NCBI GenBank assembly: GCA_030390025.1
Contig: JASTWF010000760.1
Span: forward strand, 1-64,000
Source of the DNA: Squalus acanthias
Lineage: Eukaryota
DNA: 64,000 bases
Direction: 5' to 3'
The notes beneath the pieces are model-generated. The model was not told the origin of the DNA and did not search any database. It was given only the letters and a program-made list of their open reading frames with translations. Shown one piece after another: positions 1-38,949 of the stretch. A program made the position numbers and the translations under genes. The first letter of the stretch is position 1; each line of letters opens with the position of its first letter.

Positions 1-3000
1 GTAATCCCCACCATGTTCAGGTTTGTGAACTGTCTCCGTGCTCTGTATCACTGTGTGTCTGTAATCCCCACCATGTTCAGGTTTGTGAACTCTCTCCGTG
101 CTCTGTATCACTGTGTGTCTGTAATCCCCACCATGTTCAGGTTGTTGAACTCCTCCGTGCTCTGTATCACTGTGTGTCTGTAATCCCCACCATGTTTCAG
201 GTTTGTGAACTCTCTCCGTGCTCTTATCACTGTGTGTCTGTAATCCTCACCATGTTCAGGTTTGTGAACTCTCTTCCGTGCTCTGTATCACTGTGGTCTG
301 TAATCCCACCATGTTCAGGTTTGTGAACTCGCTCCGTGCTCTGTAACACTCTGTGTGTCTTAATCCCACCATGTTCAGGTTTGTGAACTCTCTCCGTGCT
401 CTGTAGCACTGGTGTCTGTAATCCCCACCATGTTCAGGTTTGTGAACTCTCTCCGTGCTCTGTATCACTGTGTGTCTGTAATCCCCACCATGTTCAGGTT
501 TGTGAACTCTCTCCGTGCTCTGTATCACTGTGTGTCTGTAATCCCCACCATGTTCAGGTTTGTGAACTCTCTCCGTGCTCTGTATCACTGTGTGTCTGTA
601 ATCCCCACCATGTTCAGGTTTGTGAACTCTCTCCGTGCTCTGTATCACTGTGTGTCTGTAATCCCACCATGTTCAGGTTTGTGAACTCTCTCCGTGCTCT
701 GTATCACTGTGTGTCTGTAATCCCCACCATGTTCAGGTTTGTGAACTCTCTCCGTGCTCTGTATCACTGTGTGTCTGTAATCCTCACCATGTTCAGGTTT
801 GTGAACTCTCTCCGTGCTCTGTATCACTGTGTGTCTGTAATCCCCACCATGTTCAGGTTTGTGAACTCTCTCCGTGCTCTGTATCACTGTGTGTCTGTAA
901 TCCCCACCATGTTCAGGTTTGTGAACTCTCTCCGTGCTCTGTATCACTGTGTGTCTGTAATCCCCACCATGTTCAGGTTTGTGAACTCTCTCCGTGCTCT
1001 GTATCACTGTGTGTCTGTAATCCCCACCATGTTCAGGTTTGTGAACTCTCTCCGTGCTCTGTATCACTGTGTGTCTGTAATCCCCACCATGTTCAGGTTT
1101 GTGAACTCTCTCCGTGCTCTGTATCACTGTGTGTCTGTAATCCCCACCATGTTCAGGTTTGTGAACTCTCTCCGTGCTCTGTATCACTGTGTGTCTGTAA
1201 TCCCCACCATGTTCAGGTTTGTGAACTCTCTCCGTGCTCTGTATCACTGTGTGTCTGTAATCCCACCATGTTCAGGTTTGTGAACTCTCTCCGTGCTCTG
1301 TATCACTGTGTGTCTGTAATCCCCACCATGTTCAGGTTTGTGAACTCTCTCCGTGCTCTGTATCACTGTGTGTCTGTAATCCCCACCATGTTCAGGTTTG
1401 TGAACTCTCTCCGTGCTCTGTATCACTGTGTGTCTGTAATCCCCACCATGTTCAGGTTTGTGAACTCTCTCCGTGCTCTGTATCACTGTGTGTCTGTAAT
1501 CCCCACCATGTTCAGGTTTGTGAACTCTCTCCGTGCTCTGTATCACTGTGTCTGTAATCCCCACCATGTTCAGGTTTGTGAACTCTCTCCGTGCTCTGTA
1601 TCACTGTGTGTCTGTAATCCCCACCATGTTCAGGTTTGTGAACTCTCTCCGTGCTCTGTATCACTGTGTGTCTGTAATCCCACCATGTTCAGGTTTGTGA
1701 ACTCTCTCCGTGCTCTGTATCACTGTGTGTCTGTAATCCCCACCATGTTCAGGTTTGTGAACTCTCTCCGTGCTCTGTATCACTGTGTGTCTGTAATCCC
1801 CACCATGTTCAGGTTTGTGAACTCTCTCCGTGCTCTGTATCACTGTGTGTCTGTAATCCCCACCATGTTCAGGTTTGTGAACTCTCTCCGTGCTCTGTAT
1901 CACTGTGTGTCTGTAATCCCCACCATGTTCAGGTTTGTGAACTCTCTCCGTGCTCTGTATCACTGTGTGTCTGTAATCCTCACCATGTTCAGGTTTGTGA
2001 ACTCTCTCCGTGCTCTGTATCACTGTGTGTCTGTAATCCCCACCATGTTCAGGTTTGTGAACTCTCTCCGTGCTCTGTATCACTGTGTGTCTGTAATCCC
2101 CACCATGTTCAGGTTTGTGAACTCTCTCCGTGCTCTGTATCACTGTGTGTCTGTAATCCCACCATGTTCAGGTTTGTGAACTCTCTCCGTGCTCTGTATC
2201 ACTGTGTGTCTGTAATCCCCACCATGTTCAGGTTTGTGAACTCTCTCCGTGCTCTGTATCACTGTGTGTCTGTAATCCCCACCATGTTCAGGTTTGTGAA
2301 CTCTCTCCGTGCTCTGTATCACTGTGTGTCTGTAATCCCCACCATGTTCAGGTTTGAACTCTCTCCGTGCTCTGTATCACTGTGTGTCTGTAATCCCCAC
2401 CATGTTCAGGTTTGTGAACTCTCTCCGTGCTCTGTATCACTGTGTGTCTGTAATCCCCACCATGTTCAGGTTTGTGAACTCTCTCCGTGCTCTGTATCAC
2501 TGTGTGTCTGTAATCCCACCATGTTCAGGTTTGTGAACTCTCTCCGTGCTCTGTATCACTGTGTGTCTGTAATCCCCACCATGTTCAGGTTTGTGAACTC
2601 TCTCCGTGCTCTGTATCACTGTGTGTCTGTAATCCCCACCATGTTCAGGTTTGTGAACTCTCTCCGTGCTCTGTATCACTGTGTGTCTGTAATCCCCACC
2701 ATGTTCAGGTTTGTGAACTCTCTCCGTGCTCTGTATCACTGTGTGTCTGTAATCCCCACCATGTTCAGGTTTGTGAACTCTCTCCGTGCTCTGTATCACT
2801 GTGTGTCTGTAATCCCCACCATGTTCAGGTTTGTGAACTCTCTCCGTGCTCTGTATCACTGTGTGTCTGTAATCCCCACCATGTTCAGGTTTGTGAACTC
2901 TCTCCGTGCTCTGTATCACTGTGTGTCTGTAATCCCCACCATGTTCAGGTTTGTGAACTCTCTCCGTGCTCTGTATCACTGTGTGTCTGTAATCCCCACA

Positions 3001-6000
3001 TGTTCAGGTTGTTAACTCTCTCCGTGATCTGTATCACGTGAGTCTGTAATCACCACCATGTTCGTGGATTGTGAACACTCTTCGTGACCTGCTATCACTG
3101 TGTGTCCTGATAATCCCCACCATGTTCAGGTTGTGATACTCTTCTCCGTGCTCTGCTATTACTCCGTGTCTGTAATCCTCACCATGTTCAGGTATGTGAA
3201 CTCTCTCCGAGCTCTGTATCTCTGTGTCTGGTAATCCTCACCTATTAACCGGTTTGTGAACTCTCTCCGTGCTCTCTATCAACTGTGTGTCTGTAATCCC
3301 ACAATGTTCAGGTCTTGTGAACTCTCTCCGTGCTCTGTATCTCCGTGTGTCTAAATCCCCACCATGTCAGGTTTGTGAACTCTCTCCGTGCTCTGTATCA
3401 CTGTGTGTCTGTAATCCCACCATGTTCAGGTTTGTGAACTCTCTCCGTGCTCTGTATCACTGTGTGTCTGTAATCCCACCATGTTCAGGTTTGTGAACTC
3501 TCTCCGTGCTCTGTATCACTGTGTGTCTGTAATCCCACCATGTTCAGGTTTGTGAACTCTCTCCGTGCTCTGTATCACTGTGTGTCTGTAATCCTCACCA
3601 TGTTCAGGTTTGTGAACTCTCTCCGTGCTCTGTATCACTGTGTGTCTGTAATCCCCACCATGTTCAGGTTTGTGAACTCTCTCCGTGCTCTGTATCACTG
3701 TGTCTGTAATCCCCACCATGTTCAGGTTTGTGAACTCTCTCCGTGCTCTGTATCACTGTGTGTCTGTAATCCCACCATGTTCAGGTTTGTGAACTCTCTC
3801 CGTGCTCTGTATCACTGTGTGTCTGTAATCCCCACCATGTTCAGGTTTGTGAACTCTCTCCGTGCTCTGTATCACTGTGTGTCTGTAATCCCACCATGTT
3901 CAGGTTTGTGAACTCTCTCCGTGCTCTGTATCACTGTGTGTCTGTAATCCCCACCATGTTCAGGTTTGTGAACTCTCTCCGTGCTCTCTATCACTGTGTG
4001 TCTGTAATCTCCACCATGTTCAGGTTGTGAACTCTCTCCGGTGCTCTGTATCACTGTGTGTCTGTAATCCCACCATGTTCAGGTTTGTGAACTCTCTCCG
4101 TGCTCTGTATCACTGTGTGTCTGTAATCCCCACCATGTTCAGGTTTGTGAACTCTCTCCGTGCTCTGTATCACTGTGTGTCTGTAATCCCCACCATGTTC
4201 AGGTTTGTGAACTCTCTCCGTGCTCTGTATCACTGTGTGTCTGTAATCCCCACCATGTTCAGGTTTGTGAACTCTCTCCGTGCTCTGTATCACTGTGAGT
4301 CTGTAATCCCCACCATGTTCAGGTTTGTGAACTCTCTCCGTGCTCTCGTATCACTGTGTGTCTGTAATCCCCACCATGTTCAGGTTTGTGAACTCTCTCG
4401 TGCTCTCGTATCACTGTGTGTCTGTAATCCCCACCATGTTCAGGTTTGTGAACTCTCTCCGTGCTCTGTATCACTGTGTGTCTGTAATCCTCACCATGTT
4501 CAGGTTCTGTGAACTCTCTCCGTGCTCTGTATCACTGTGTGTCTGTAATCCCCTCCATGTTCAGCGTTTGTGATCTCTCTCCGTGCTCTGTATCACTGTG
4601 TGTCTGTAATCCCCACCATGTCAGGTTTGTGAACTCTCTCCGTGCTCTGTATCACTGTGTGTCTGTAATCCCCACCATGTTCAGGCTTGTGAACTCTCTC
4701 CGGCTCGGTATCACTGTGTGTCTGTAATCCCCACCATGTTCAGGTTTGTGAACTCTCTCCGTGCTCTCTATCACTGTGTGTCTGTATCCCCACCATGTTC
4801 AGTTTGTGAACTCTCTCCGTGCTCTGTATCACTGTGTGTCTGTAATCCTCCACATGTTCAGGTTTGTGAACTCTCTCCGTGCTCTGCTCACACTGTGTGT
4901 CTGTAATCCCCACCATGTTCAGGTTTGTGAACTCTCTCCGTGCTCTGTATCACTGTGTCTGTAATCCCCACCATGTCAGGTTTAGTGAACTCTCTCCGTG
5001 CTCCTGTATCACTGTGTGTCTGTCATCCCCACCATGTTCAGGTCTGTGAACTCTCTCCGTGCTCTGTCTCCACTGTGTGTCTGTAATCCCCACCATGTTC
5101 AGGTTTGTGAACTCTCTCCGTGCTCTGTATCACTGTGTGTCTGTAATCCCCACATGTTCAGGTTTTGTGAACTCTCTCCGTGCTCTGTATCACTGTGTGT
5201 CTGTAATCCCCACCATGTTCAGGTTTGTGAACTCTCTCCGTGCTCTGTATCACTGTGTGTCTGTAATCCCCACCATGTTCAGGTTTGTGAACTTTCTCCG
5301 TGCTCTGTATCCATGTGCTGTCTGTAATCCCCACCATGTTCAGGTTTGTGACTCTCTCCGTGCTCTGTATCACTGTGTGTCTGTAATCCCCAACCATGTT
5401 CAGGTTTGTGAACTCTCTCCGTGCTCTGTATCACTGTGTCTCTGTAATCCCCACCATGTTCAGGTTTGTGAACTCTCTCCGTGCTCTGTATCATCTGTGT
5501 GTCTGTAATCCCCACCATGTTCAGGTTTGTGAACTCTCTCCGTGCTCTGCTATCACTGTGTGTCTGAATCCCCACCATGTTCAGGTTTGTGAACTCTCTC
5601 CGTGCTCTGTATCACTGTGTGTCTGTAATCCCCCACCATGTTCAGGTTTGTGAACTCTCTCCGTGCTCTCTATCACTGTGTGTCTGTAATCCCTCACCAT
5701 GTTCAGGTTTGTGAACTCTCTCCGTGCTCTTTTATCACTGTGTGTCTGTAATCTCCACCCATGTTCAGGTTTGTGAACTCTCTCCAGTGCTCTGTATCAC
5801 TGTGTGTCTGTAATCCCCACCATGTTCAGGTTTGTGTACTCTCTCCGTGCTCTGTATCACTGTGTGTCTGTAATCCTCACCATGTTCAGGTTTGTGAACT
5901 CTCTCCGTCGCTCTGTATCACTGTGTGTCTGTAATCCCCACCATGTTCAGGTTTGTGAACTCTCTCCGTGCTCTGTATCACTGTGTGTCCTGTAATCCCC

Positions 6001-9000
6001 ACCATGTTCAGGTTTGTGAACTCTCTCCGTGCTCTGTATCACTGTGTGTCTGTAATCCCCACCATGTTCAGGTTTGTGAACTCTCTCCGTGCTCTGTATC
6101 ACTGTGTCTGTAATCCCCACCATGTTCAGGTTTGTGAACTCTCTCCGTGCTCTGTATCACTGTGTGTCTGTAATCCCCACCATGTTCAGGTTTGTGAACT
6201 CTCTCCGTGCTCTGTATCACTGTGTGTCTGTAATCCCCACCATGTTCAGGTTTGTGAACTCTCTCCGTGCTCTGTATCACTGTGTGTCTGTAATCCCCAC
6301 CATGTTCAGGTTTGTGAACTCTCTCCGTGCTCTGTATCACTGTGTGTCTGTAATCCCCACCATGTTCAGGTTTGTGAACTCTCTCCGTGCTCTGTATCAC
6401 TGTGTGTCTGTAATCCCCACCATGTTCAGGTTTGTGAACTCTCTCCGTGCTCTGTATCACTGTGTGTCTGTAATCCCCACCATGTTCAGGTTTGTGAACT
6501 CTCTCCGTGCTCTGTATCACTGTGTGTCTGTAATCCCCACCATGTTCAGGTTTGTGAACTCTCTCCGTGCTCTGTATCACTGTGTGTCTGTAATCCCCAC
6601 CATGTTCAGGTTTGTGAACTCTCTCCGTGCTCTGTATCACTGTGTGTCTGTAATCCCCACCATGTTCAGGTTTGTGAACTCTCTCCGTGCTCTGTATCAC
6701 TGTGTGTCTGTAATCCCCACCATGTTCAGGTTTGTGAACTCTCTCCGTGCTCTGTATCACTGTGTGTCTGTAATCCTCACCATGTTCAGGTTTGTGAACT
6801 CTCTCCGTGCTCTGTATCACTGTGTGTCTGTAATCCCCACCATGTTCAGGTTTGTGAACTCTCTCCGTGCTCTGTATCACTGTGTGTCTGTAATCCCCAC
6901 CATGTTCAGGTTTGTGAACTCTCTCCGTGCTCTGTATCACTGTGTGTCTGTAATCCCCACCATGTTCAGGTTTGTGAACTCTCTCCGTGCTCTGTATCAC
7001 TGTGTGTCTGTAATCCCACCATGTTCAGGCTTTGTGAACTCTCTCCGTGCTCTGTATCACTGTGTGTCTGTAATCCCCACCATGTTCAGGTTTGTGAACT
7101 CTCTCCGTGCTCTCTATCACTGTGTGTCTGTAATCCCCACCATGTTCAGGTTTGTGAACTCTCTCTCGTGCTCCTGTATCACTGTGTGTCTGTAATCCCT
7201 ACAATGTTCCAGGTTTGTGAACTCTCTCCGTGCTCTCGTATCACTGTGTGTCTGTAATCCCCACCATGGTTCAGGTTTGTGAACTCTCTCCGTGCTCTGT
7301 ATCACTGTGTGTCTGTAATCCCACCATGTTCAGGTTTGTGAACTCTCTCCGTGCTCTGTATCACTGTGTGTCTGTAATCCCCACCATGTTCAGGTTTGTG
7401 AACTCTCTCCGTGCTCTGTAACACTGTGTGTCTGTAATCCCACGCATGTCAGGTTTGTGAACTCTCTCCGTGCTCTGTATCACTGTGTGTCTGTAATCCT
7501 CCACCAAGTTCAGGTTTGTGAACTCTCTCCGTAGCTCTGTATCACTGTGTGTCTGTAATCCCCACCATGTTCAGGTTTGTGAACTCTCTCCGTGCTCTGC
7601 TATCACTGTGTGTCTTAATCCCCTCCATGTTCAGGTTTGTGAACTCTCTCCGTGCTCTGCTAATCACTGTGTGTCTGTATCCCAACAGGTTCAGGTTTGT
7701 GAATCTCTCTCCCGTGCTCCCTGTATCACTGTCCGTGTCTGTATCCTCACTATGTTTTCAGGTATGTTGAACCTCCTCTCCGTGCCTCATAATCACTGTG
7801 TGTCTGTAATCCCCACCATGTTCAGGTTTTGTGAACTCTCTCCGTGCTCTGTATCACTGTGTGTCTGTAATCGTCCACCATGTTCAGGTTTGTGAACTCT
7901 CTCCGTGCTCTGTATCACTGTGTTCTGTAATCCCACCATGTTCAGGTTTGTGAACTCTCTCCGTGCTCTGTATCACTGTGTGTTCTGTAATCCTCACCAT
8001 GTTCAGGATTGTGAACTCTCTCCGTGCTCTGTATCACTGTGTGTCTGTAATCCCCACCATGTTCAGGTTTGTGAACTCTCTCCGTGCTCTCTATCACTGT
8101 GTGTCTGTAATCCCCACCATGTTCAGGTTTGTGAACTCTCTCCGTGCTCTGTATCACTGTGTGTCTGTAATCCCCACCATGTTCAGGTTTGTGAACTCTC
8201 TCCGTGCTCTGTATCACTGTGTGTCTGTAATCCCACCATGTTCAGGTTTGTGAACTCTCTCCGTGCTCTGTATCACTGTGTGTCTGTAATCCCCACCATG
8301 TTCAGGTTTGTGAACTCTCTCCGTGCTCTGTATCACTGTGTGTCTGTAATCCCCACCATGTTCAGGTTTGTGAACTCTCTCCGTGCTCTGTATCACTGTG
8401 TGTCTGTAATCCTCACCATGTTCAGGTTTGTGAACTCTCTCCGTGCTCTGTATCACTGTGTGTCTGTAATCCCCACCATGTTCAGGTTTGTGAACTCTCT
8501 CCGTGCTCTGTTCACTGTGTGTCTGTAATCTCCACCATGTTCAGGTTTGTGAACTCTCTCCGTGCTCTGTATCACTGTGTCTGTAATCCCCACCATGTTC
8601 AGGTTTGTGAACTCTCTCCGTGCTCTGTATCACTGTGTGTCTGTTAATCCTCACCATGTTCATGTTTGTGAACTCTCTCCGTGCTCTGTATCACTGTGTG
8701 TCTGTAATCCTCCACCATGTTCAGGTTTGTGAACTCTCTCCGTGCTCTGTATCACTGTGTGTCTGTAATCCCCACCATGTTCAGGTTTGTGAACTCTCTC
8801 CGTGCTCTCTATCACTGTGTGTCTGTAATCCCCACCATGTTCAGGTTTGTGAACTCTCTCCGTGCTCTGTATCACTGTGTGTCTGTAATCCTCACCATAG
8901 TTCAGGTTTGTGAACTCTCTCCGTGCTCTGTATCACTGTGTGTCTGTAATCCCCACCATGTTCAGGTTTGTGAACTCTCTCCGTGCTCTGTATCACTGTG

Positions 9001-24000: not shown

Positions 24001-27000
24001 GTGTGTCTGTAATCCCCACCCATGTTCAGGTTTGTGAACTCTCTCCGTGCTCTGTATCACTGTGTGTCTGTAATCCCCACCATGTTCAGGTTTGGTGAAC
24101 TCTCTCCGTGCTCTGTATCACTGTGTGTCTGTAATCCCCACCATGTTCAGGTTTGTGAACTCTCTCCGTGCTCTGCTATCACTGTGTGTCTGTAATCCCC
24201 ACCATGTTCAGGTTTGTGAACTCTCTCCGTGCTCTGTATCACTGTGTGTCTGTAATCCCCACCATGTTCAGGTTTGTGAACTCTCTCCGTGCTCTGTATC
24301 ACTGTGTGTCTGTAATCCCCACCATGTTCAGGTTTGTGAACTCTCTCCGTGCTCTGTATCACTGTGTGTCTGTAATCCCCACCATGTTCAGGTTTGTGAA
24401 CTCTCTCCGTGCTCTGTATCACTGTGTGTCTGTAATCCCACCATGTTCAGGTTTGTGAACTCTCTCCGTGCTCTGTATCACTGTGTGTCTGTAATCCCAC
24501 CATGTTCAGGTTTGTGAACTCTCTCCGTGCTCTGTATCACTGTGTGTCTGTAATCCCCACCATGTTCAGGTTTGTGAACTCTCTCCGTGCTCTGTATCAC
24601 TGTGTGTCTGTAATCCCCACCATGTTCAGGTTTGTGAACTCTCTCCGTGCTCTGTATCACTGTGTGTCTGTAATCCCCACCATGTTCAGGTTTGTGAACT
24701 CTCTCCGTGCTCTGTATCACTGTGTGTCTGTAATCCCCACCATGTTCAGGTTTGTGAACTCTCTCCGTGCTCTGTATCACTGTGTGTCTGTAATCCTCAC
24801 CATGTTCAGGTTTGTGAACTCTCTCCGTGCTCTGTATCACTGTGTGTCTGTAATCCCCACCATGTTCAGGTTTGTGAACTCTCTCCGTGCTCTGTATCAC
24901 TGTGTGTCTGTAATCCCCACCATGTTCAGGTTTGTGAACTCTCTCCGTGCTCTGTATCACTGTGTGTCTGTAATCCCCACCATGTTCAGGTTTGTGAACT
25001 CTCTCCGTGCTCTGTATCACTGTGTGTCTGTAATCCCCACCATGTTCAGGTTTGTGAACTCTCTCCGTGCTCTGTATCACTGTGTGTCTGTAATCCCCAC
25101 CATGTTCAGGTTTGTGAACTCTCTCCGTGCTCTGTATCACTGTGTGTCTGTAATCCTCACCATGTTCAGGTTTGTGAACTCTCTCCGTGCTCTGTATCAC
25201 TGTGTGTCTGTAATCCTCACCATGTTCAGGTTTGTGAACTCTCTCCGTGCTCTGTATCACTGTGTGTCTGTAATCCCCACCATGTTCAGGTTTGTGAACT
25301 CTCTCCGTGCTCTGTATCACTGTGTGTCTGTAATCCCCACCATGTTCAGGTTTGTGAACTCTCTCCGTGCTCTGTATCACTGTGTGTCTGTAATCCTCAC
25401 CATGTTCAGGTTTGTGAACTCTCTCCGTGCTCTGTATCACTGTGTGTCTGTAATCCCCACCATGTTCAGGTTTGTGAACTCTCTCCGTGCTCTGTATCAC
25501 TGTGTGTCTGTAATCCTCACCATGTTCAGGTTTGTGAACTCTCTCCGTGCTCTGTATCACTGTGTGTCTGTAATCCCCACCATGTTCAGGTTTGTGAACT
25601 CTCTCCGTGCTCTGTATCACTGTGTGTCTGTAATCCCCACCATGTTCAGGTTTGTGAACTCTCTCCGTGCTCTGTATCACTGTGTGTCTGTAATCCCCAC
25701 CATGTTCAGGTTTGTGAACTCTCTCCGTGCTCTGTATCACTGTGTGTCTGTAATCCCCACCATGTTCAGGTTTGTGAACTCTCTCCGTGCTCTGTATCAC
25801 TGTGTGTCTGTAATCCTCACCATGTTCAGGTTTGTGAACTCTCTCCGTGCTCTGTATCACTGTGTGTCTGTAATCCCCACCATGTTCAGGTTTGTGAACT
25901 CTCTCCGTGCTCTGTATCACTGTGTGTCTGTAATCCTCACCATGTTCAGGTTTGTGAACTCTCTCCGTGCTCTGTATCACTGTGTGTCTGTAATCCCCAC
26001 CATGTTCAGGTTTGTGAACTCTCTCCGTGCTCTGTATCACTGTGTGTCTGTAATCCCCACCATGTTCAGGTTTGTGAACTCTCTCCGTGCTCTGTATCAC
26101 TGTGTGTCTGTAATCCCCACCATGTTCAGGTTTGTGAACTCTCTCCGTGCTCTGTATCACTGTGTGTCTGTAATCCCACCATGTTCAGGTTTGTGAACTC
26201 TCTCCGTGCTCTGTATCACTGTGTGTCTGTAATCCCCACCATGTTCAGGTTTGTGAACTCTCTCCGTGCTCTGTATCACTGTGTGTCTGTAATCCCCACC
26301 ATGTTCAGGTTTGTGAACTCTCTCCGTGCTCTGTATCACTGTGTGTCTGTAATCCCCACCATGTTCAGGTTTGTGAACTCTCTCCGTGCTCTGTATCACT
26401 GTGTGTCTGTAATCCCCACCATGTTCAGGTTTGTGAACTCTCTCCGTGCTCTGTATCACTGTGTGTCTGTAATCCCCACCATGTTCAGGTTTGTGAACTC
26501 TCTCCGTGCTCTGTATCACTGTGTGTCTGTAATCCCCACCATGTTCAGGTTTGTGAACTCTCTCCGTGCTCTGTATCACTGTGTGTCTGTAATCCCCACC
26601 ATGTTCAGGTTTGTGAACTCTCTCCGTGCTCTGTATCACTGTGTGTCTGTAATCCCCACCATGTTCAGGTTTGTGAACTCTCTCCGTGCTCTGTATCACT
26701 GTGTCTGTAATCCCCACCATGTTCAGGTTTGTGAACTCTCTCCGTGCTCTGTATCACTGTGTGTCTGTAATCCCCACCATGTTCAGGTTTGTGAACTCTC
26801 TCCGTGCTCTCTATCACTGTGTGTCTGTAATCCCCACCATGTTCAGGTTTGTGAACTCTCTCCGTGCTCTGTATCACTGTGTGTCTGTAATCCCCACCAT
26901 GTTCAGGTTTGTGAACTCTCTCCGTGCTCTGTATCACTGTGTGTCTGTAATCCTCACCATGTTCAGGTTTGTGAACTCTCTCCGTGCTCTGTATCACTGT

Positions 27001-30000
27001 GTGTCTGTAATCCCCACCATGTTCAGGTTTGTGAACTCTCTCCGTGCTCTGTATCACTGTGTGTCTGTAATCCCCACCATGTTCAGGTTTGTGAACTCTC
27101 TCCGTGCTCTGTATCACTGTGTGTCTGTAATCCCCACCATGTTCAGGTTTGTGAACTCTCTCCGTGCTCTGTATCACTGTGTGTCTGTAATCCCACCATG
27201 TTCAGGTTTGTGAACTCTCTCCGTGCTCTGTATCACTGTGTGTCTGTAATCCCCACCATGTTCAGGTTTGTGAACTCTCTCCGTGCTCTGTATCACTGTG
27301 TGTCTGTAATCCCCACCATGTTCAGGTTTGTGAACTCTCTCCGTGCTCTGTATCACTGTGTGTCTGTAATCCTCACCATGTTCAGGTTTGTGAACTCTCT
27401 CCGTGCTCTGTATCACTGTGTGTCTGTAATCCCCACCATGTTCAGGTTTGTGAACTCTCTCCGTGCTCTGTATCACTGTGTGTCTGTAATCCCCACCATG
27501 TTCAGGTTTGTGAACTCTCTCCGTGCTCTGTATCACTGTGTGTCTGTAATCCCCACCATGTTCAGGTTTGTGAACTCTCTCCGTGCTCTGTATCACTGTG
27601 TGTCTGTAATCCTCACCATGTTCAGGTTTGTGAACTCTCTCCGTGCTCTGTATCACTGTGTGTCTGTAATCCCCACCATGTTCAGGTTTGTGAACTCTCT
27701 CCGTGCTCTGTATCACTGTGTGTCTGTAATCCCCACCATGTTCAGGTTTGTGAACTCTCTCCGTGCTCTGTATCACTGTGTGTCTGTAATCCTCACCATG
27801 TTCAGGTTTGTGAACTCTCTCCGTGCTCTGTATCACTGTGTGTCTGTAATCCCCACCATGTTCAGGTTTGTGAACTCTCTCCGTGCTCTGTATCACTGTG
27901 TGTCTGTAATCCCCACCATGTTCAGGTTTGTGAACTCTCTCCGTGCTCTGTATCACTGTGTGTCTGTAATCCCCACCATGTTCAGGTTTGTGAACTCTCT
28001 CCGTGCTCTGTATCACTGTGTGTCTGTAATCCCCACCATGTTCAGGTTTGTGAACTCTCTCCGTGCTCTGTATCACTGTGTGTCTGTAATCCCCACCATG
28101 TTCAGGTTTGTGAACTCTCTCCGTGCTCTGTATCACTGTGTGTCTGTAATCCCCACCATGTTCAGGTTTGTGAACTCTCTCCGTGCTCTCTATCACTGTG
28201 TGTCTGTAATCCTCACCATGTTCAGGTTTGTGAACTCTCTCCGTGCTCTGTATCACTGTGTGTCTGTAATCCTCACCATGTTCAGGTTTGTGAACTCTCT
28301 CCGTGCTCTGTATCACTGTGTGTCTGTAATCCCCACCATGTTCAGGTTTGTGAACTCTCTCCGTGCTCTGTATCACTGTGTGTCTGTAATCCCACCATGT
28401 TCAGGTTTGTGAACTCTCTCCGTGCTCTGTATCACTGTGTGTCTGTAATCCCCACCATGTTCAGGTTTGTGAACTCTCTCCGTGCTCTGTATCACTGTGT
28501 GTCTGTAATCCTCACCATGTTCAGGTTTGTGAACTCTCTCCGTGCTCTGTATCACTGTGTGTCTGTAATCCCCACCATGTTCAGGTTTGTGAACTCTCTC
28601 CGTGCTCTGTATCACTGTGTGTCTGTAATCCCACCATGTTCAGGTTTGTGAACTCTCTCCGTGCTCTGTATCACTGTGTGTCTGTAATCCCCACCATGTT
28701 CAGGTTTGTGAACTCTCTCCGTGCTCTGTATCACTGTGTGTCTGTAATCCCCACCATGTTCAGGTTTGTGAACTCTCTCCGTGCTCTGTATCACTGTGTG
28801 TCTGTAATCCCACCATGTTCAGGTTTGTGAACTCTCTCCGTGCTCTGTATCACTGTGTGTCTGTAATCCTCACCATGTTCAGGTTTGTGAACTCTCTCCG
28901 TGCTCTGTATCACTGTGTGTCTGTAATCCCCACCATGTTCAGGTTTGTGAACTCTCTCCGTGCTCTGTATCACTGTGTGTCTGTAATCCTCACCATGTTC
29001 AGGTTTGTGAACTCTCTCCGTGCTCTGTATCACTGTGTGTCTGTAATCCTCACCATGTTCAGGTTTGTGAACTCTCTCCGTGCTCTGTATCACTGTGTGT
29101 CTGTAATCCCCACCATGTTCAGGTTTGTGAACTCTCTCCGTGCTCTGTATCACTGTGTGTCTGTAATCCCCACCATGTTCAGGTTTGTGAACTCTCTCCG
29201 TGCTCTGTATCACTGTGTGTCTGTAATCCCCACCATGTTCAGGTTTGTGAACTCTCTCCGTGCTCTGTATCACTGTGTGTCTGTAATCCACACCATGTTC
29301 AGGTTTGTGAACTCTCTCCGTGCTCTCTATCACTGTGTGTCTGTAATCCTCACCATGTTCAGGTTTGTGAACTCTCTCCGTGCTCTGTATCACTGTGTGT
29401 CTGTAATCCCCACCATGTTCAGGTTTGTGAACTCTCTCCGTGCTCTGTATCACTGTGTGTCTGTAATCCCCACCATGTTCAGGTTTGTGAACTCTCTCCG
29501 TGCTCTGTATCACTGTGTGTCTGTAATCCTCACCATGTTCAGGTTTGTGAACTCTCTCCGTGCTCTGTATCACTGTGTGTCTGTAATCCCCACCATGTTC
29601 AGGTTTGTGAACTCTCTCCGTGCTCTGTATCACTGTGTGTCTGTAATCCTCACCATGTTCAGGTTTGTGAACTCTCTCCGTGCTCTGTATCACTGTGTGT
29701 CTGTAATCCCACCATGTTCAGGTTTGTGAACTCTCTCCGTGCTCTGTATCACTGTGTGTCTGTAATCCCCACCATGTTCAGGTTTGTGAACTCTCTCCGT
29801 GCTCTGTATCACTGTGTGTCTGTAATCCCCACCATGTTCAGGTTTGTGAACTCTCTCCGTGCTCTCTATCACTGTGTGTCTGTAATCCCCACCATGTTCA
29901 GGTTTGTGAACTCTCTCCGTGCTCTGTATCACTGTGTGTCTGTAATCCCCACCATGTTCAGGTTTGTGAACTCTCTCCGTGCTCTGTATCACTGTGTGTC

Positions 30001-33000
30001 TGTAATCCCACCATGTTCAGGTTTGTGAACTCTCTCCGTGCTCTGTATCACTGTGTGTCTGTAATCCCCACCATGTTCAGGTTTGTGAACTCTCTCCGTG
30101 CTCTGTATCACTGTGTGTCTGTAATCCCCACCATGTTCAGGTTTGTGAACTCTCTCCGTGCTCTGTATCACTGTGTGTCTGTAATCCCCACCATGTTCAG
30201 GTTTGTGAACTCTCTCCGTGCTCTGTATCACTGTGTGTCTGTAATCCCCACCATGTTCAGGTTTGTGAACTCTCTCCGTGCTCTGTATCACTGTGTGTCT
30301 GTAATCCTCACCATGTTCAGGTTTGTGAACTCTCTCCGTGCTCTGTATCACTGTGTGTCTGTAATCCCCACCATGTTCAGGTTTGTGAACTCTCTCCGTG
30401 CTCTCTATCACTGTGTGTCTGTAATCCCCACCATGTTCAGGTTTGTGAACTCTCTCCGTGCTCTGTATCACTGTGTGTCTGTAATCCCCACCATGTTCAG
30501 GTTTGTGAACTCTCTCCGTGCTCTCTATCACTGTGTGTCTGTAATCCCCACCATGTTCAGGTTTGTGAACTCTCTCCGTGCTCTGTATCACTGTGTGTCT
30601 GTAATCCTCACCATGTTCAGGTTTGTGAACTCTCTCCGTGCTCTGTATCACTGTGTCTGTAATCCCCACCATGTTCAGGTTTGTGAACTCTCTCCGTGCT
30701 CTGTATCACTGTGTGTCTGTAATCCTCACCATGTTCAGGTTTGTGAACTCTCTCCGTGCTCTGTATCACTGTGTGTCTGTAATCCCCACCATGTTCAGGT
30801 TTGTGAACTCTCTCCGTGCTCTGTATCACTGTGTGTCTGTAATCCCCACCATGTTCAGGTTTGTGAACTCTCTCCGTGCTCTGTATCACTGTGTGTCTGT
30901 AATCCCCACCATGTTCAGGTTTGTGAACTCTCTCCGTGCTCTCTATCACTGTGTGTCTGTAATCCCCACCATGTTCAGGTTTGTGAACTCTCTCCGTGCT
31001 CTGTATCACTGTGTGTCTGTAATCCCCACCATGTTCAGGTTTGTGAACTCTCTCCGTGCTCTGTATCACTGTGTGTCTGTAATCCTCACCATGTTCAGGT
31101 TTGTGAACTCTCTCCGTGCTCTGTATCACTGTGTCTGTAATCCCCACCATGTTCAGGTTTGTGAACTCTCTCCGTGCTCTGTATCACTGTGTGTCTGTAA
31201 TCCCACCATGTTCAGGTTTGTGAACTCTCTCCGTGCTCTGTATCACTGTGTGTCTGTAATCCCCACCATGTTCAGGTTTGTGAACTCTCTCCGTGCTCTC
31301 TATCACTGTGTGTCTGTAATCCCCACCATGTTCAGGTTTGTGAACTCTCTCCGTGCTCTGTATCACTGTGTGTCTGTAATCCCCACCATGTTCAGGTTTG
31401 TGAACTCTCTCCGTGCTCTGTATCACTGTGTGTCTGTAATCCCACCATGTTCAGGTTTGTGAACTCTCTCCGTGCTCTGTATCACTGTGTGTCTGTAATC
31501 CCCACCATGTTCAGGTTTGTGAACTCTCTCCGTGCTCTGTATCACTGTGTGTCTGTAATCCCCACCATGTTCAGGTTTGTGAACTCTCTCCGTGCTCTGT
31601 ATCACTGTGTGTCTGTAATCCCCACCATGTTCAGGTTTGTGAACTCTCTCCGTGCTCTCTATCACTGTGTGTCTGTAATCCCCACCATGTTCAGGTTTGT
31701 GAACTCTCTCCGTGCTCTGTATCACTGTGTGTCTGTAATCCTCACCATGTTCAGGTTTGTGAACTCTCTCCGTGCTCTCTATCACTGTGTGTCTGTAATC
31801 CTCACCATGTTCAGGTTTGTGAACTCTCTCCGTGCTCTCTATCACTGTGTGTCTGTAATCCTCACCATGTTCAGGTTTGTGAACTCTCTCCGTGCTCTGT
31901 ATCACTGTGTGTCTGTAATCCTCACCATGTTCAGGTTTGTGAACTCTCTCCGTGCTCTGTATCACTGTGTGTCTGTAATCCCCACCATGTTCAGGTTTGT
32001 GAACTCTCTCCGTGCTCTGTATCACTGTGTGTCTGTAATCCTCACCATGTTCAGGTTTGTGAACTCTCTCCGTGCTCTGTATCACTGTGTGTCTGTAATC
32101 CTCACCATGTTCAGGTTTGTGAACTCTCTCCGTGCTCTGTATCACTGTGTGTCTGTAATCCCCACCATGTTCAGGTTTGTGAACTCTCTCCGTGCTCTGT
32201 ATCACTGTGTGTCTGTAATCCTCACCATGTTCAGGTTTGTGAACTCTCTCCGTGCTCTGTATCACTGTGTGTCTGTAATCCCCACCATGTTCAGGTTTGT
32301 GAACTCTCTCCGTGCTCTCTATCACTGTGTGTCTGTAATCCCCACCATGTTCAGGTTTGTGAACTCTCTCCGTGCTCTGTATCACTGTGTGTCTGTAATC
32401 CCCACCATGTTCAGGTTTGTGAACTCTCTCCGTGCTCTGTATCACTGTGTGTCTGTAATCCCCACCATGTTCAGGTTTGTGAACTCTCTCCGTGCTCTGT
32501 ATCACTGTGTGTCTGTAATCCTCACCATGTTCAGGTTTGTGAACTCTCTCCGTGCTCTGTATCACTGTGTGTCTGTAATCCCCACCATGTTCAGGTTTGT
32601 GAACTCTCTCCGTGCTCTCTATCACTGTGTGTCTGTAATCCTCACCATGTTCAGGTTTGTGAACTCTCTCCGTGCTCTGTATCACTGTGTGTCTGTAATC
32701 CTCACCATGTTCAGGTTTGTGAACTCTCTCCGTGCTCTCTATCACTGTGTGTCTGTAATCCCCACCATGTTCAGGTTTGTGAACTCTCTCCGTGCTCTGT
32801 ATCACTGTGTGTCTGTAATCCTCACCATGTTCAGGTTTGTGAACTCTCTCCGTGCTCTGTATCACTGTGGTCTGTAATCCCCACCATGTTCAGGTTTGTG
32901 AACTCTCTCCGTGCTCTGTATCACTGTGTGTCTGTAATCCTCACCATGTTCAGGTTTGTGAACTCTCTCCGTGCTCTGTATCACTGTGTGTCTGTAATCC

Positions 33001-34130
33001 TCACCATGTTCAGGTTTGTGAACTCTCTCCGTGCTCTGTATCACTGTGTGTCTGTAATCCCCACCATGTTCAGGTTTGTGAACTCTCTCCGTGCTCTGTA
33101 TCACTGTGTGTCTGTAATCCTCACCATGTTCAGGTTTGTGAACTCTCTCCGTGCTCTGTATCACTGTGTGTCTGTAATCCCCACCATGTTCAGGTTTGTG
33201 AACTCTCTCCGTGCTCTGTATCACTGTGTGTCTGTAATCCCCACCATGTTCAGGTTTGTGAACTCTCTCCGTGCTCTGTATCACTGTGTGTCTGTAATCC
33301 CCACCATGTTCAGGTTTGTGAACTCTCTCCGTGCTCTGTATCACTGTGTGTCTGTAATCCTCACCATGTTCAGGTTTGTGAACTCTCTCCGTGCTCTGTA
33401 TCACTGTGTGTCTGTAATCCCCACCATGTTCAGGTTTGTGAACTCTCTCCGTGCTCTGTATCACTGTGTGTCTGTAATCCTCACCATGTTCAGGTTTGTG
33501 AACTCTCTCCGTGCTCTGTATCACTGTGTGTCTGTAATCCTCACCATGTTCAGGTTTGTGAACTCTCTCCGTGCTCTGTATCACTGTGTGTCTGTAATCC
33601 CCACCATGTTCAGGTTTGTGAACTCTCTCCGTGCTCTCTATCACTGTGTGTCTGTAATCCCCACCATGTTCAGGTTTGTGAACTCTCTCCGTGCTCTGTA
33701 TCACTGTGTGTCTGTAATCCTCACCATGTTCAGGTTTGTGAACTCTCTCCGTGCTCTGTATCACTGTGTGTCTGTAATCCTCACCATGTTCAGGTTTGTG
33801 AACTCTCTCCGTGCTCTGTATCACTGTGTGTCTGTAATCCTCACCATGTTCAGGTTTGTGAACTCTCTCCGTGCTCTGTATCACTGTGTGTCTGTAATCC
33901 CACCATGTTCAGGTTTGTGAACTCTCTCCGTGCTCTGTATCACTGTGTGTCTGTAATCCCCACCATGTTCAGTTTTGTGAACTCTCTCCGTGCTCTGTAT
34001 CACTGTGTGTCTGTAATCCTCACTATGTTCAGGTTTGTGAACTCTCTCCGTGCTCTGTATCACTGTGTGTCTGTAATCCCCACCATGTACAGGTTTTTGT
34101 ACGGCTCTCTCCGTGCTCTGTATCACTGTG
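1..34130 (-). repeat. 60-bp tandem satellite (~570 copies, extends beyond left edge) derived from a V-gene recombination signal sequence
   Basis: Plus-strand unit GTAATCCCCACCATGTTCAGGTTTGTGAACTCTCTCCGTGCTCTGTATCACTGTGTGTCT repeats continuously. On the minus strand it reads CACAGTG-ATACAGAGCACGGAGAGAGTTC-ACAAACCTG-AACATGGTGGGGATTACAGACA. The terminal unit is the authentic RSS of the V at 34131-34433. Confidence 0.97.
34092..34130 (-). promoter_or_regulatory. Consensus 23-RSS of supporting V-delta
   Basis: Minus strand CACAGTG (34124-34130), 23-nt spacer (34101-34123) and ACAAAAACC (34092-34100); both motifs are perfect. Confidence 0.97.
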
Positions 34131-34433
34131 CTGTGCGCGGACTCAGTGCACAGTAATACACAGCGGAGTCACTCAGTTGCAGTTTCGCGATGTTTAACCG
34201 GCTGATTTTCTGCGCCCCATCGGCAGAAGCAGAAATTCGGCCCCCATCAGCGTTTTCTTTATTCCCCTCTCCTGAAGTGTTTCTCTGAAGCAGGTATTTC
34301 GGAGCCTGCCCTGGGGACTGACGGTACCAGTGTACTGTCAGACAGAACCCTGAATATTCGCAGTTTAAAGTAACGGTGTCACCGGCAGCAGAGGATTGTA
34401 GAGGCGGACCCTGGGACATCGAGAAACTGGAAT
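34131..34433 (-). CDS. TCR delta V exon, NAR-TCR supporting type (no leader found, CDR1 Cys)
   Basis: V-set motifs TLNC...WYRQ...DSAVYYCALS. Phase-1 acceptor CCTGCAG|AT at 34434. Extra Cys in CDR1 (SGFCLT, codon 34342-34344). No convincing leader exon upstream, and it lies downstream of a NAR-TCR J donor, as in the established NAR-TCR cassette. Confidence 0.88.
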
Positions 34434-34634
34434 CTGCAGGATTAAAATGGGAGAATGTTATTTATTTGGCTGCTGTTTACCCGGGGACACTTGTGAATCA
34501 CAGGAATAGTTCTGCCTCTCGCGCTAATGCTGTTCTTCATTTGAAGCCTGTTCCAACTTTATTCACTGTCATTGGTCAAGGAACCAGAGTTGGGAGGGGG
34601 GTGCTGTGGGGGGTGGAGGGGCGGGGGCGCTGAG

Positions 34635-34875
34635 GAGAAATGTATTTACACAGTGAGCCGTTATGATCTGGAATGCACTGCCTGAAATGGTGGTGGGAGC
34701 AGATTCAATAGTAACTTTCAACAGGAAATTGGATCAATACTGGAAAAGGAAAATTTGTCAGGGCTATGGGGAAAGAGCGGGGCGAGTGGGAGTAATTGAA
34801 TAGCTCCTTCAAAGCGCCGCACAGGCAAGGTGGGCCGAATGACCTCCTTCTCTGCCGTATGATTCTATGATTTCT
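34635..34875 (+). mobile_element. Degenerate CR1-type LINE 3' end fragment
   Basis: Resembles the CR1 3' end seen elsewhere in the window (TGGAATGCACTGCCT...GGGCCGAATGACCTCCTTCT) with a TGATTCTA-type tail. Confidence 0.65.
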
Positions 34876-37228: not shown

Positions 37229-37670
37229 AAATAAGAGCAGGAGTAGGCCATTCGGCCCTTGGAGCCTGGTCAGCCATTCAATAAGATCAAGGCTGATCAA
37301 CGACCTCAACTCCACTTTCCCGCCCGATCTCCATATCCCTTGGTTCCCCTAGAGTCCAAAAATCTATCTCAGGCTTGAATATACTCAAAGACTCAGCATC
37401 CACAGCCCTCTGGGGCAAAGAATTACAAAGATTCACAACCCTCTGAGTGAAGAAAATTCTCCTAATCTCAGTCTTAAATGGCTGACCCCTTATCCTGAGA
37501 CTATACCCCCTAGTTCTGGACACTCCAGCCAGGAAACAACCTCAGCATCTACCCTGTCAATCCCCTTCAGAATATTGTATGTTTCAATGAGATCACCTCT
37601 CATTCTTCTGAACTTCAGAGAGTATAGGCCCATTCTACAAATCCGTCATCCTAGGACAGCCCTCTCATCC
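37229..37670 (-). mobile_element. CR1 LINE 3' fragment (cassette copy A)
   Basis: Minus ORF SRTRGYSLRIRGQPFKTEIRRIFFTQRVVNLCNSLPQ; paralogous to 43011-43490. Confidence 0.85.
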
Positions 37671-38616: not shown

Positions 38617-38949
38617 CGGCTGTGACAGTCACCACTGTCCCGGATCCATCCACAGTATCATGGTGTTCCTTCCGGTACGAGTACTCAGCTTTACAGTAAT
38701 AGGTGGCGCTGTCTTCAACTCGCACATCCCGAATTTCCAACGAAAATATCTTGTCTGCCTTATTAGTCGACACAACAAATCGCTCTCCGCTCGAGATCCG
38801 CTCCCGCTCTGTCCCGGTCCGGGTTTGTCTGAAGAAATCCCCACGCGTTAAAGAACGGGCGCAAAAACCACCATCGAAAACACAGGTGATGGTGAGAGAC
38901 TGACACTCCTCCCTGGTCACCACTAGCGGGGTCTGTGTCACTGAAGAGC
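38617..38949 (-). CDS. NAR-TCR (IgNAR-like) V domain exon with V, D and J already joined in frame
   Basis: Single exon from acceptor TTTCCAG|GC to donor GCCG|GTAAGT encoding VTQTPLVVTREECQSLTITC...EDSATYYCKAEYSYRKEHHDTVDGSGTVVTVTA. VNAR-like short CDR2 region. No RSS or intervening DNA between V and J. Confidence 0.9.

What the first reader, a model, noticed from the sequence alone, without database searches (positions are those of the whole stretch)
1..34130. A >34-kb satellite built from ~570 copies of a V(D)J recombination signal, abutting a TCR-delta V gene
Seen: the authentic RSS (minus) is CACAGTG ATACAGAGCACGGAGAGAGCCGT ACAAAAACC TGTACATGGTGGGGATTACAGACA. The repeat unit is CACAGTG ATACAGAGCACGGAGAGAGTTC ACAAACC TGAACATGGTGGGGATTACAGACA. 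The unit is therefore the RSS plus 24 nt of flank, 3 nt shorter. The heptamer is perfect, and the nonamer reads either ACAAACCTG at 22 nt (5/9) or TCACAAACC at 20 nt (7/9). All copies point the same way as the V's own RSS and start immediately behind it. Established: RAG binds and nicks at CAC heptamers and uses cryptic RSSs in an orientation-dependent way during locus scanning. Inference: the array could be a RAG landing pad that boosts use of the NAR-TCR supporting V, a decoy field that suppresses it, or a neutral expansion tolerated because the nonamer is crippled. I know of no described RSS-derived macrosatellite in an antigen-receptor locus, but I cannot search for one.
Basis: partly seen in the sequence, partly recalled or inferred. 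Interest (0 to 1): 0.9.

Follow-up and report, generated by a model that had tools for sequence, protein, structure and literature searches.

The report
Giant repeat copied from recombination signal
A T-cell-receptor gene segment of a cartilaginous fish is followed by over 34,000 bases made of about 570 head-to-tail, slightly damaged copies of its own cut-here signal. The array is probably a tolerated by-product, but it is a natural test bed for how the gene-cutting enzyme scans DNA.

Summary
Window 1-34130 is one 60-bp tandem array of 570 units, about 98% like their consensus. All units point one way, and the array runs off the window start.

The copy next to the gene is a perfect 23-RSS, CACAGTG-23-ACAAAAACC, of an intact leaderless V exon. 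That exon has the published marks of a NAR-TCR supporting V-delta.

The repeat unit is this RSS plus 24 nt of flank. It differs by one 3-bp spacer deletion and three substitutions. The homologous nonamer therefore sits at 20 bp, and only the authentic copy scores 8/9 or better at 22-24 bp.

Contigs from four independent runs hold the unit at 11-406 times the depth of the V exon, so a few-copy assembly artefact is unlikely.

Heptamers are no more conserved than the rest of the unit, and there are no signal joints.

Best reading: a slippage or unequal-exchange satellite seeded by the RSS and tolerated because its units are crippled. Whether it modulates RAG is untested.

Unchecked first-stage notes report similar arrays, from 17 copies to over 37 kb, behind supporting V-deltas on other pieces of this genome. 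I found no paper describing such a satellite.

The parts
1..34067 (-). 569 derived 60-bp units (crippled heptamer-spacer-nonamer-flank copies). The array continues beyond the window start.
   Evidence: TRF. Segmentation and variant map. Sequence read.
34068..34091 (-). 24-nt flank behind the authentic RSS. It is the ancestral template for positions 37-60 of the unit and differs from them at 1 of 24 positions.
   Evidence: A contig of run X6 covers 34071-34338 with this flank.
34092..34100 (-). Authentic nonamer ACAAAAACC (9/9).
34101..34123 (-). Authentic 23-nt spacer. It ends in CCGT, as in 4 of the 6 V 23/24-RSSs of the window.
34124..34130 (-). Authentic heptamer CACAGTG, abutting the V coding end.
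34131..34433 (-). Intact leaderless V exon (NAR-TCR supporting V-delta type), with Cys in CDR1 and a YYC motif.
   Evidence: Pfam V-set E=4e-16. Nearest database proteins are Callorhinchus Ig-like domains at 50-58% identity. Criteria from PMC1845163.
34434..34435 (-). Phase-1 splice acceptor AG behind a pyrimidine tract.
   Evidence: Read.
38617..38941 (-). Context: a germline-joined NAR-type V-J exon with a phase-1 GTAAGT donor at 38616. It would splice onto the supporting V.

Best explanation
This is a real tandem satellite that arose from the supporting V-delta's own 23-RSS. A 63-bp segment, running from the first base of the heptamer to 24 nt past the nonamer, was duplicated head to tail. 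One duplicate acquired a 3-bp spacer deletion and three substitutions. That crippled version was then amplified and homogenised by replication slippage and unequal exchange, to at least 569 copies here. The V-adjacent edge copy kept, or was selected to keep, a perfect RSS. The units retain a perfect heptamer with a favourable AT spacer start, but their homologous nonamer is 7/9 and sits at 20 bp. They are therefore not competent 23-RSSs. The array is most likely a near-neutral passenger of the NAR-TCR cassette. My prediction is that in thymocytes it yields at most low-level, orientation-restricted RAG off-target nicks or joins at unit heptamers. Shown: the anatomy, the homology, the direction of derivation, the lack of differential constraint, and multiplicity in independent data. 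Inferred: the amplification mechanism, the neutrality and the RAG behaviour.
For: The array and its orientation are established. The unit aligns to the authentic RSS plus flank at 57 of 60 positions with one 3-bp gap. The direction of derivation has three supports. First, the authentic copy has the full consensus at a 23-nt spacer. Second, its spacer ends in CCGT just before the nonamer, as in 4 of the 6 V 23/24-RSSs in the window, while the unit has lost this. Third, contigs of a close V paralogue or allele in runs X1 and X6 carry the same RSS, and in X6 the flank down to 34071. Units are crippled: 1 of 552 heptamers, the authentic one, has a nonamer of 8/9 or better at 22-24 nt, 6 more reach 7/9 at 22 nt, and 479 score 5/9 at 22 nt. 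There is no sign of selection on the signal. Substitutions per site across 569 units are 1.86 in the heptamer, 2.78 in the nonamer, about 1.8 in the spacer without polymorphic site 11, and about 1.8 in the flank without sites 48 and 60. All junctions are head to tail, and no reverse heptamer occurs in the array, so there are no signal joints. The unit junction reads ...ACA|CACA..., so CACA microhomology suffices to set the repeat phase at the heptamer. The array is not a few-copy artefact: in 4 of 4 runs (3 coded organism labels, 4 studies) the array bins carry 11-406 times the summed contig depth of the V-exon bins. They carry roughly 50-140 times less than the interspersed repeats at 37269-37650. 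The one-G-shorter variant also occurs in X1 contigs (table 4). Variants are scattered irregularly with no higher-order repeat, as expected of a real array.
Against: No raw reads were available, so the length, and the adjacency of this particular V copy to the array, rest on the assembly alone. Listed contigs stop at 34071 or 34095 and carry a paralogue's letters at 34216-34247. The tool warns that summed contig depth is not a copy number. The far end of the array is outside the window. Unchecked first-stage notes place RSS arrays behind supporting V-deltas on at least seven other pieces of this genome. That could mean retention for a function rather than hitch-hiking. The heptamer with an AT spacer start belongs to the best class in a high-throughput assay of 12-RSSs (PMC9723617, passages). 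With about 570 sites, even very weak activity per site could add up. Two of the three substitutions are complementary changes in a 5-bp inverted repeat around the nonamer, which neutrality does not explain.
Confidence: 0.6

Rival explanations
1. The array is a functional RAG modulator. Hundreds of same-orientation heptamers directly behind the V's RSS would act as a decoy or sink that lowers use of this V. Alternatively they would act as a landing pad or scanning brake that raises RAG dwell time next to the authentic RSS, tuning use of NAR-TCR supporting V genes.
For: There are 552 perfect heptamers, all in the orientation of the V's RSS. The CACAGTG-AT start is in the top class of a 12-RSS assay (PMC9723617). 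[quoted passage not shown] Cryptic 23-RS in mouse gamma-satellite recombine on plasmids and are cut in cells (PMC2193808, passages). Unchecked notes report arrays behind supporting V-deltas on other pieces of the genome.
Against: The heptamer is not more conserved than the spacer or flank. All units share a 3-bp-short spacer and a weakened nonamer. Reported array lengths range from 17 copies to over 37 kb (unchecked), which looks like satellite drift rather than a tuned element. The position of D/J/C relative to the array is not visible in the window. No binding, cleavage or usage data exist.
Confidence: 0.15
2. The array was seeded by RAG in the germ line. Nicks or breaks at the RSS in germ cells, which are documented indirectly in sharks, would have been repaired with a local duplication. 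This would explain why the repeat phase starts at the heptamer border and why RSS-like satellites recur in this genome. This rival concerns origin only and is compatible with a neutral present state.
For: A germline-joined NAR V-J lies 4.5 kb away. Its unjoined paralogue still has about 417 bp and two RSSs between V and J, so RAG-type joining did occur in the germ line at this locus. Germline RAG-like activity in sharks is argued in PMC2193156 (abstract and passages). Homology between the V locus and the unit stops within about 5 nt of the heptamer/coding border. Unchecked notes describe other RSS-like satellites near Ig and TCR genes in this genome.
Against: CACA microhomology at both unit ends explains the phase without RAG. 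There are no signal joints, hybrid joints or inverted heptamers in the array. I know of no mechanism by which RAG cleavage yields a head-to-tail duplication. The other satellites are first-reader notes that I could not inspect.
Confidence: 0.15
3. The array is real but its size is an assembly artefact. The assembler would have expanded or mis-joined a much shorter array, or merged arrays from several paralogous cassettes.
For: The array touches the window edge. The distal half (below about 20 kb) carries more indels per unit than the proximal half, up to 2.2 against 0.3-0.9 differences per unit. That could reflect weaker consensus. No listed contig bridges V and array, and the runs show a paralogue's V letters. 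Immune loci are known trouble spots for long-read assemblies (PMC12090573, search listing only).
Against: Depth of the unit is 11-406 times that of the V-exon bins in 4 of 4 runs. The irregular, non-periodic variant pattern gives reads unique overlaps. The main variants also occur in independent contigs (tables 3 and 4).
Confidence: 0.1
4. The unit is a genome-wide satellite unrelated to V genes that merely resembles an RSS, or one from which the V captured its signal.
For: Array contigs in X1 and X9 differ by about 7-8% from the window's units (11-12 other letters and 2 gaps in 154 nt), so other subfamilies exist elsewhere.
Against: There is 57/60 identity to the adjacent authentic RSS plus flank. 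The authentic copy shares CCGT-ACAAAAACC with other V RSSs in the window. The unit is absent from the other 29.9 kb of the window apart from one 15-nt match. Its depth is far below that of the interspersed repeats. All first-stage notes on look-alike arrays place them behind V genes (unchecked).
Confidence: 0.03

Closest known systems
Cryptic 23-RS in mouse gamma (major) satellite (Cowell et al. 2003, PMC2193808; passages read)
   Same: A tandem satellite in which each unit carries heptamer-spacer-nonamer-like sites. Some of those sites recombine on plasmids and are cut when RAG is induced, and the authors discuss the satellite as a harmless sink for RAG breaks.
   Different: Gamma satellite has a 234-bp unit, is pericentromeric and makes up about 6% of the genome. 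It is not derived from an identifiable gene-segment RSS and is not in an antigen-receptor locus. Here the unit is a recognisable copy of the neighbouring V's own RSS, lies directly behind that RSS, and has a perfect heptamer but a 20-bp spacer.
Cryptic RSSs used during linear RAG scanning (PMC13190342; passages read)
   Same: Heptamer-led sites inside an antigen-receptor locus whose use depends on orientation convergent with the bait RSS. All 552 heptamers here share one orientation.
   Different: Known cryptic RSSs are scattered chance matches. Here they form a 60-bp-periodic array of common descent. No joins have been shown for them.
Germline-joined shark Ig/TCR genes as footprints of RAG in germ cells (PMC2193156; abstract and passages)
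   Same: Heritable remodelling of an antigen-receptor locus centred on RSSs. One such joined V-J lies 4.5 kb from the array.
   Different: Germline joining deletes the RSSs. Here an RSS has been multiplied, and nothing in the array's structure requires RAG.
Ordinary minisatellite or macrosatellite expansion by slippage and unequal exchange (general knowledge, recalled)
   Same: Head-to-tail units, high homogeneity, a divergent edge copy, scattered variants, and copy number that appears to differ widely between paralogous sites.
   Different: The seed is a functional cis-element of V(D)J recombination, so every unit carries a perfect RAG heptamer.

Membership tests
Tandem satellite (macrosatellite-sized array) | Head-to-tail units of constant period over more than 10 kb | tested here: met
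   Period 60, 569.9 copies, 1..34130. 562 of 569 unit junctions are gap-free.
Tandem satellite (macrosatellite-sized array) | Present at high multiplicity in independent sequence data | tested here: met
   In 4 of 4 runs the array bins carry 11-406 times the summed contig depth of the V-exon bins. This is contig data only, and the tool warns it is not a copy number.
Tandem satellite (macrosatellite-sized array) | Physical length verified by spanning reads, Southern blot or FISH | not testable with these tools
   All runs are kept as contigs.
Functional 23-RSS (applied to the repeat units) | Heptamer beginning CAC, ideally CACAGTG | tested here: met
   552 perfect heptamers in the array. 522 of 570 units start with one.
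Functional 23-RSS (applied to the repeat units) | Spacer of 23 +/- 1 bp to an A-rich nonamer close to ACAAAAACC | tested here: not met
   The homologous nonamer TCACAAACC (7/9) lies at 20 bp. At 22-24 bp, 479 of 552 heptamers score 5/9, 6 score 7/9, and only the authentic copy scores 9/9. The real V RSSs of the window score 6-9/9 at 23-24 bp.
Functional 23-RSS (applied to the repeat units) | Supports RAG cleavage or joining with a 12-RSS partner | not testable with these tools
   Needs a plasmid recombination assay, or LM-PCR or HTGTS in thymocytes.
Functional 23-RSS (the V-adjacent copy, 34130..34092) | Consensus heptamer, 23-bp spacer and consensus nonamer, abutting an intact V coding end | tested here: met
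   CACAGTG-23-ACAAAAACC directly after the open V exon.
NAR-TCR supporting V-delta (criteria from PMC1845163) | No leader peptide; the V exon is spliced to an upstream NAR V-J exon | tested here: met
   There is a phase-1 acceptor at 34435-34434. No ATG-initiated hydrophobic leader exon with a matching donor appears in the roughly 270 nt upstream, read by eye. The NAR-type V-J exon 4.2 kb upstream ends in a phase-1 GTAAGT donor. No transcript evidence.
NAR-TCR supporting V-delta (criteria from PMC1845163) | Conserved Cys in CDR1 | tested here: met
   ...LNCEYSGFCLTVHWYRQ....
NAR-TCR supporting V-delta (criteria from PMC1845163) | The partner NAR-TcR V has a Cys in the a-b loop and lacks the Trp of the WYRK motif | tested here: met
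   Both NAR-type V exons read ...REECQSLTITC... and ...FFRQT.... Both match Pfam V-set.
NAR-TCR supporting V-delta (criteria from PMC1845163) | Rearranges to D-delta/J-delta and is expressed with C-delta | not testable with these tools
   D, J and C are not in the window, and no RNA run held the stretch.
RAG signal-end reinsertion or transposition product | Signal joints or paired inverted heptamers at element ends | tested here: not met
   There are 0 reverse-orientation heptamers in 34,130 nt of array.

The most novel reading that the evidence does not exclude
RSS-derived satellites are a regular, lineage-specific feature of this genome's antigen-receptor loci rather than a one-off. On this reading, RAG acting in germ cells repeatedly damages RSSs. 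Repair seeds head-to-tail duplications that grow into arrays. The arrays behind NAR-TCR supporting V-delta genes, reported from 17 copies to over 600, then act as orientation-specific RAG sinks or scanning brakes. Their length would set how often each cassette's supporting V is used. That would be a heritable, copy-number-tunable control of V usage built from the recombination signal itself.
Probability: 0.12. Interest if true: 0.85.

Novelty: new variant of a known kind. Interest (0 to 1): 0.62.

Why it matters
If the array is as assembled, it places about 570 perfect, co-oriented RAG heptamers, each with a defined defect (spacer 3 bp short, nonamer 7/9), directly behind a bona fide 23-RSS in a living locus. 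Nobody could easily engineer that. It would show how much heptamer-only sites matter to RAG scanning, off-target cutting and V usage, especially if paralogous cassettes really differ in array length.

In evolutionary terms, it shows that a recombination signal can seed a satellite. Together with the germline-joined gene next door, it bears on how far RAG still reshapes shark germ lines.

In practical terms, RSS-based annotators will call hundreds of false gene-segment signals here, and such arrays are likely breakpoints in assemblies of immune loci.

Tried and rejected
A protein search with the V exon gave only 2 Callorhinchus proteins at 50-58% identity, out of 5 candidates. The NAR-type V gave 6 hits, the best named ones from Chiloscyllium punctatum at 63-80% identity. 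None had usable context. Two exact-pattern scans of metagenome contigs with stretches of the unit found 0 matches.

Rejected structural ideas:
- Higher-order repeat structure. The variants are scattered: A 75, B 35, both 5, one-G-shorter 65, exact consensus 259, other 131, out of 570.
- Stronger conservation of the heptamer or nonamer.
- Signal-joint or transposition structure. There are 0 reverse heptamers.
- A stable hairpin. Two substitutions keep a 5-bp inverted repeat around the nonamer complementary, but single-strand DNA folding of two-unit stretches and of the authentic copy is no better than shuffles (z 0.12, 0.49, 0.26).
- The unit elsewhere in the window. There is only one 15-nt exact match, inside a 54-bp repeat at 55259-55455.
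- The TRF sub-row at 8548-8637, which is ordinary units.

Not done. I could not compute a RIC score because no model was available. I ran no transcription-factor motif test because no library was available.

Literature. Five full-text searches found no RSS-derived satellite. The nearest case is gamma-satellite cRS. PMC1458790 (the original NAR-TcR paper) and PMC7909615 (a 2021 review) are not held, so an earlier mention there cannot be excluded. A search for spacer-length statements in PMC9723617 found none. The intolerance of RAG for spacers more than 1 bp off, and the 23/12 layout of V-delta, D-delta and J-delta, are recalled rather than read here. I asked for no supplementary files.

Earlier scan notes. 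Look-ups by sequence were blank.


Full report

Tandem Repeats Finder reports a single array at 1..34130 with period 60, 569.9 copies, 97% matches and 1% indels. Cutting the minus strand into units with a fuzzy match to the commonest 60-mer gives 570 units. Of the 569 junctions, 562 are gap-free. Of the 570 units, 259 are identical to the consensus and 394 are exactly 60 nt long. The mean is about one difference per unit. The array holds 552 perfect CACAGTG heptamers on the minus strand and none on the plus strand. The other 29,870 nt of the window hold 8 and 4. The array runs off the window start, so its true length is unknown.

2. THE GENE BESIDE THE ARRAY

On the minus strand an open V exon runs from 34433 to 34131, behind a pyrimidine tract and an AG acceptor in phase 1. 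It matches Pfam V-set at E=4e-16. It contains the canonical Cys, WYRQ and YYC motifs and a further Cys in CDR1. No leader-like exon is visible in the roughly 270 nt upstream, read by eye.

About 4.2 kb upstream lies a NAR-type V exon, 38941..38617. It has a Cys in the a-b loop and FFRQ in place of WYRQ, and it ends in a J-like GSGTVVTV motif and a phase-1 GTAAGT donor. These are the published marks of NAR-TcR V and its associated leaderless TcR-delta V (PMC1845163, passages; background in PMC3457774, PMC5931798 and PMC12227049, passages). Calling this gene a NAR-TCR supporting V-delta is therefore justified on structure. No transcript evidence was available.

3. THE UNIT IS THE V'S OWN SIGNAL

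The V is followed by CACAGTG, a 23-nt spacer and ACAAAAACC, which is a perfect 23-RSS (34130..34092). Then come 24 nt of flank (34091..34068), and the first consensus-type unit starts at 34067.

A global alignment of these 63 nt with the consensus unit gives 57 identities of 60 and one 3-bp gap at the end of the spacer. The three substitutions are A>T, A>C and T>A, in and around the nonamer. In that register the homologous nonamer reads TCACAAACC (7/9) at a 20-bp spacer.

The direction of descent is from RSS to satellite, for two reasons:
- The authentic copy has the full consensus. Its spacer ends in CCGT immediately before the nonamer, as in 4 of the 6 V-gene 23/24-RSSs in this window. The unit has lost that feature.
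- Contigs from other runs that carry a close paralogue or allele of the V also carry the same RSS, and in one case the flank down to 34071.

4. ANATOMY OF THE ARRAY

Variation is low and evenly spread. Across 569 units, substitutions per site are:
- heptamer: 1.86
- homologous nonamer: 2.78
- spacer: about 1.8, once polymorphic site 11 (45 units) is set aside
- flank: about 1.8, once sites 48 (84 units) and 60 (16 units) are set aside

The signal elements are therefore not under visibly stronger constraint than the rest of the unit. The main variants, including a one-G-shorter form in 65 units, are scattered without higher-order periodicity. The half of the array below about 20 kb carries more indels. 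There are no inverted heptamers, so nothing resembles a signal joint.

Two of the three substitutions that separate the unit from the authentic copy keep a 5-bp inverted repeat around the nonamer complementary (GTACA/TGTAC becomes GTTCA/TGAAC). However, single-strand folding is no better than shuffled sequence. I leave this unexplained.

5. INDEPENDENT DATA

In 4 of 4 runs laid (three coded organism labels, four samples, four studies), the bins inside the array carry 11 to 406 times the summed contig depth of the V-exon bins. They carry roughly 50 to 140 times less than the interspersed repeats at 37269-37650. The tool warns that such sums are not copy numbers. I take them only to show that the unit is highly repeated in independent samples but is not one of the dominant genome-wide repeats.

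There are two limits on this evidence:
- The best holder has only 0.46 of the sampled words. At 34216-34247 the contigs of X1, X6 and X9 read a paralogue's letters. No listed contig bridges from V into a consensus unit. The adjacency of this particular V to a 34-kb array therefore rests on the assembly.
- Array contigs in X1 and X9 differ by about 7-8% from the window's units, so other subfamilies exist elsewhere.

6. RECURRENCE IN THE GENOME (LEADS ONLY)

First-stage notes of this scan, none followed up, describe tandem RSS arrays directly behind supporting V-delta genes on other pieces of the same genome. The reported sizes are 17, about 27, about 33 and about 96 copies, a 633-letter array, and one of more than 37 kb. 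The notes also describe RSS-like satellites next to Ig genes. I could not inspect any of them.

If they hold, the array is a trait of the whole NAR-TCR cassette family, and its copy number varies more than thirty-fold. This moved my reading from "one odd array" to "a family feature". That fits hitch-hiking through cassette duplication, and it also leaves more room for function.

7. WHAT THE UNITS CAN AND CANNOT DO

Only 1 of 552 heptamers, the authentic one, has a nonamer of 8/9 or better at 22-24 bp. Six more reach 7/9 at 22 bp through small insertions. The six real V RSSs of the window score 6-9/9 at 23-24 bp.

From recalled knowledge, RAG tolerates about +/-1 bp in spacer length. On that basis the units should be very poor partners in 12/23-coupled cleavage. 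On the other side, the heptamer with an AT spacer start is in the most active class of a massively parallel 12-RSS assay (PMC9723617, abstract and passages). Scanning RAG uses cryptic, convergent sites at low level (PMC13190342, passages). Cryptic 23-RS inside mouse gamma-satellite do recombine and are cut in cells (PMC2193808, passages).

A join at any unit heptamer would be non-productive, because the V reading frame hits TGA in the heptamer. With about 570 sites, even 0.2% relative activity per site would rival the authentic RSS. Either the units are essentially dead or this V is handicapped.

8. MOST LIKELY MECHANISM

I commit to the following account. A head-to-tail duplication of the RSS plus flank arose by slippage. 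The unit junction ...ACA|CACA... supplies the microhomology that sets the phase at the heptamer. One duplicate lost 3 bp and changed its nonamer. That version was amplified and homogenised by slippage and unequal exchange. The edge copy next to the V stayed functional. The array persists as a near-neutral passenger (confidence 0.6; for the RSS origin alone, about 0.9).

The rivals are:
- a RAG-modulating function (0.15)
- seeding by germline RAG damage (0.15, compatible with the above)
- a length inflated by assembly (0.1)
- an unrelated genome-wide satellite (0.03)

Germline RAG action at this locus is plausible. The NAR V-J exon at 38617-38710 is germline-joined, while its 88%-identical paralogue at 44444-45149 still has about 417 bp and two RSSs between V and J (compare PMC2193156). 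Nothing in the array itself requires RAG.

9. COMPARISON AND NOVELTY

Satellites carrying cryptic RS are known (gamma-satellite), and so are cryptic RSSs in receptor loci. New here is a satellite that is demonstrably a copy of a gene segment's own RSS and sits directly behind that RSS.

Five full-text searches found no description of such an array. The library lacks most subscription papers, and the two most relevant NAR-TCR papers were not held. I rate it a new variant of a known kind.

10. LIMITS

- No raw reads, no RNA and no other loci were available.
- No RIC model or motif library was available.
The nearest database proteins are from Chiloscyllium punctatum and Callorhinchus milii.

Noticed in passing
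window 38617-38710 (minus) versus 44444-44901 (minus): The NAR-type V proximal to the supporting V is germline-joined, in frame, to its J. The 88%-identical upstream paralogue still has a 12-spacer RSS after V (heptamer at 44884), about 417 bp of intervening DNA, and a J with a 23-spacer RSS (nonamer 44540-44532, heptamer 44508-44502).
   Followed up: partly
window 37229-39095 and 43033-45311: Two NAR-type V cassettes share 86-89% identity, but only the proximal one is followed by a supporting V in the window. Homology of the distal cassette ends at about 43033, next to reverse-transcriptase fragments. Both J exons end in phase-1 GTAAGT donors. Other first-stage notes read this layout as a possible three-V-domain chain. 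I did not test splicing.
   Followed up: no
window 55259-55455 (plus): A 54-bp repeat of 3.6 copies. One copy holds an exact 15-nt match to the start of the satellite unit (heptamer plus the first 8 spacer bases, at 55373-55387, BLAST E 0.007). The other copies have degenerate heptamers. It lies between two divergently oriented V genes and may be a second, small RSS-derived repeat.
   Followed up: partly
window 55472-55979 (plus): A 61-bp repeat of 8.4 copies at 94% identity, immediately after the 54-bp repeat. It has no clear RSS motifs. Origin unknown.
   Followed up: no
window 37990-38111 and 43803-43925: A 21-bp minisatellite of about 5.9 copies sits at the same position in both NAR cassettes, in the presumed intron downstream of the J exon.
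   Followed up: no
window 53074-53385 (-), 54050-54532 (-), 56164-56625 (+), 57573-57878 (+), 63102-63554 (+): Five further TCR alpha/delta-type V genes lie in both orientations, with 23/24-spacer RSSs. Two near-identical pairs face each other (53122 with 57858, and 54248 with 56498), suggesting an inverted duplication of a V pair.
   Followed up: partly
window 34092-34118 versus the unit consensus: Two of the three substitutions separating the unit from the authentic RSS are complementary changes in a 5-bp inverted repeat that brackets the nonamer. By a rough post hoc count, chance is about 0.3-1%. Folding shows no stable structure. Unexplained.
   Followed up: partly
window 39454-40470, 42829-43640, 49008-52709, 60529-62103: Several LINE-type reverse-transcriptase and endonuclease ORF fragments, including a long near-continuous element at about 49.0-52.7 kb on the plus strand. 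The bins at 34589-34722 and 37135-37650 are very high-copy interspersed repeats in all four runs.
   Followed up: no
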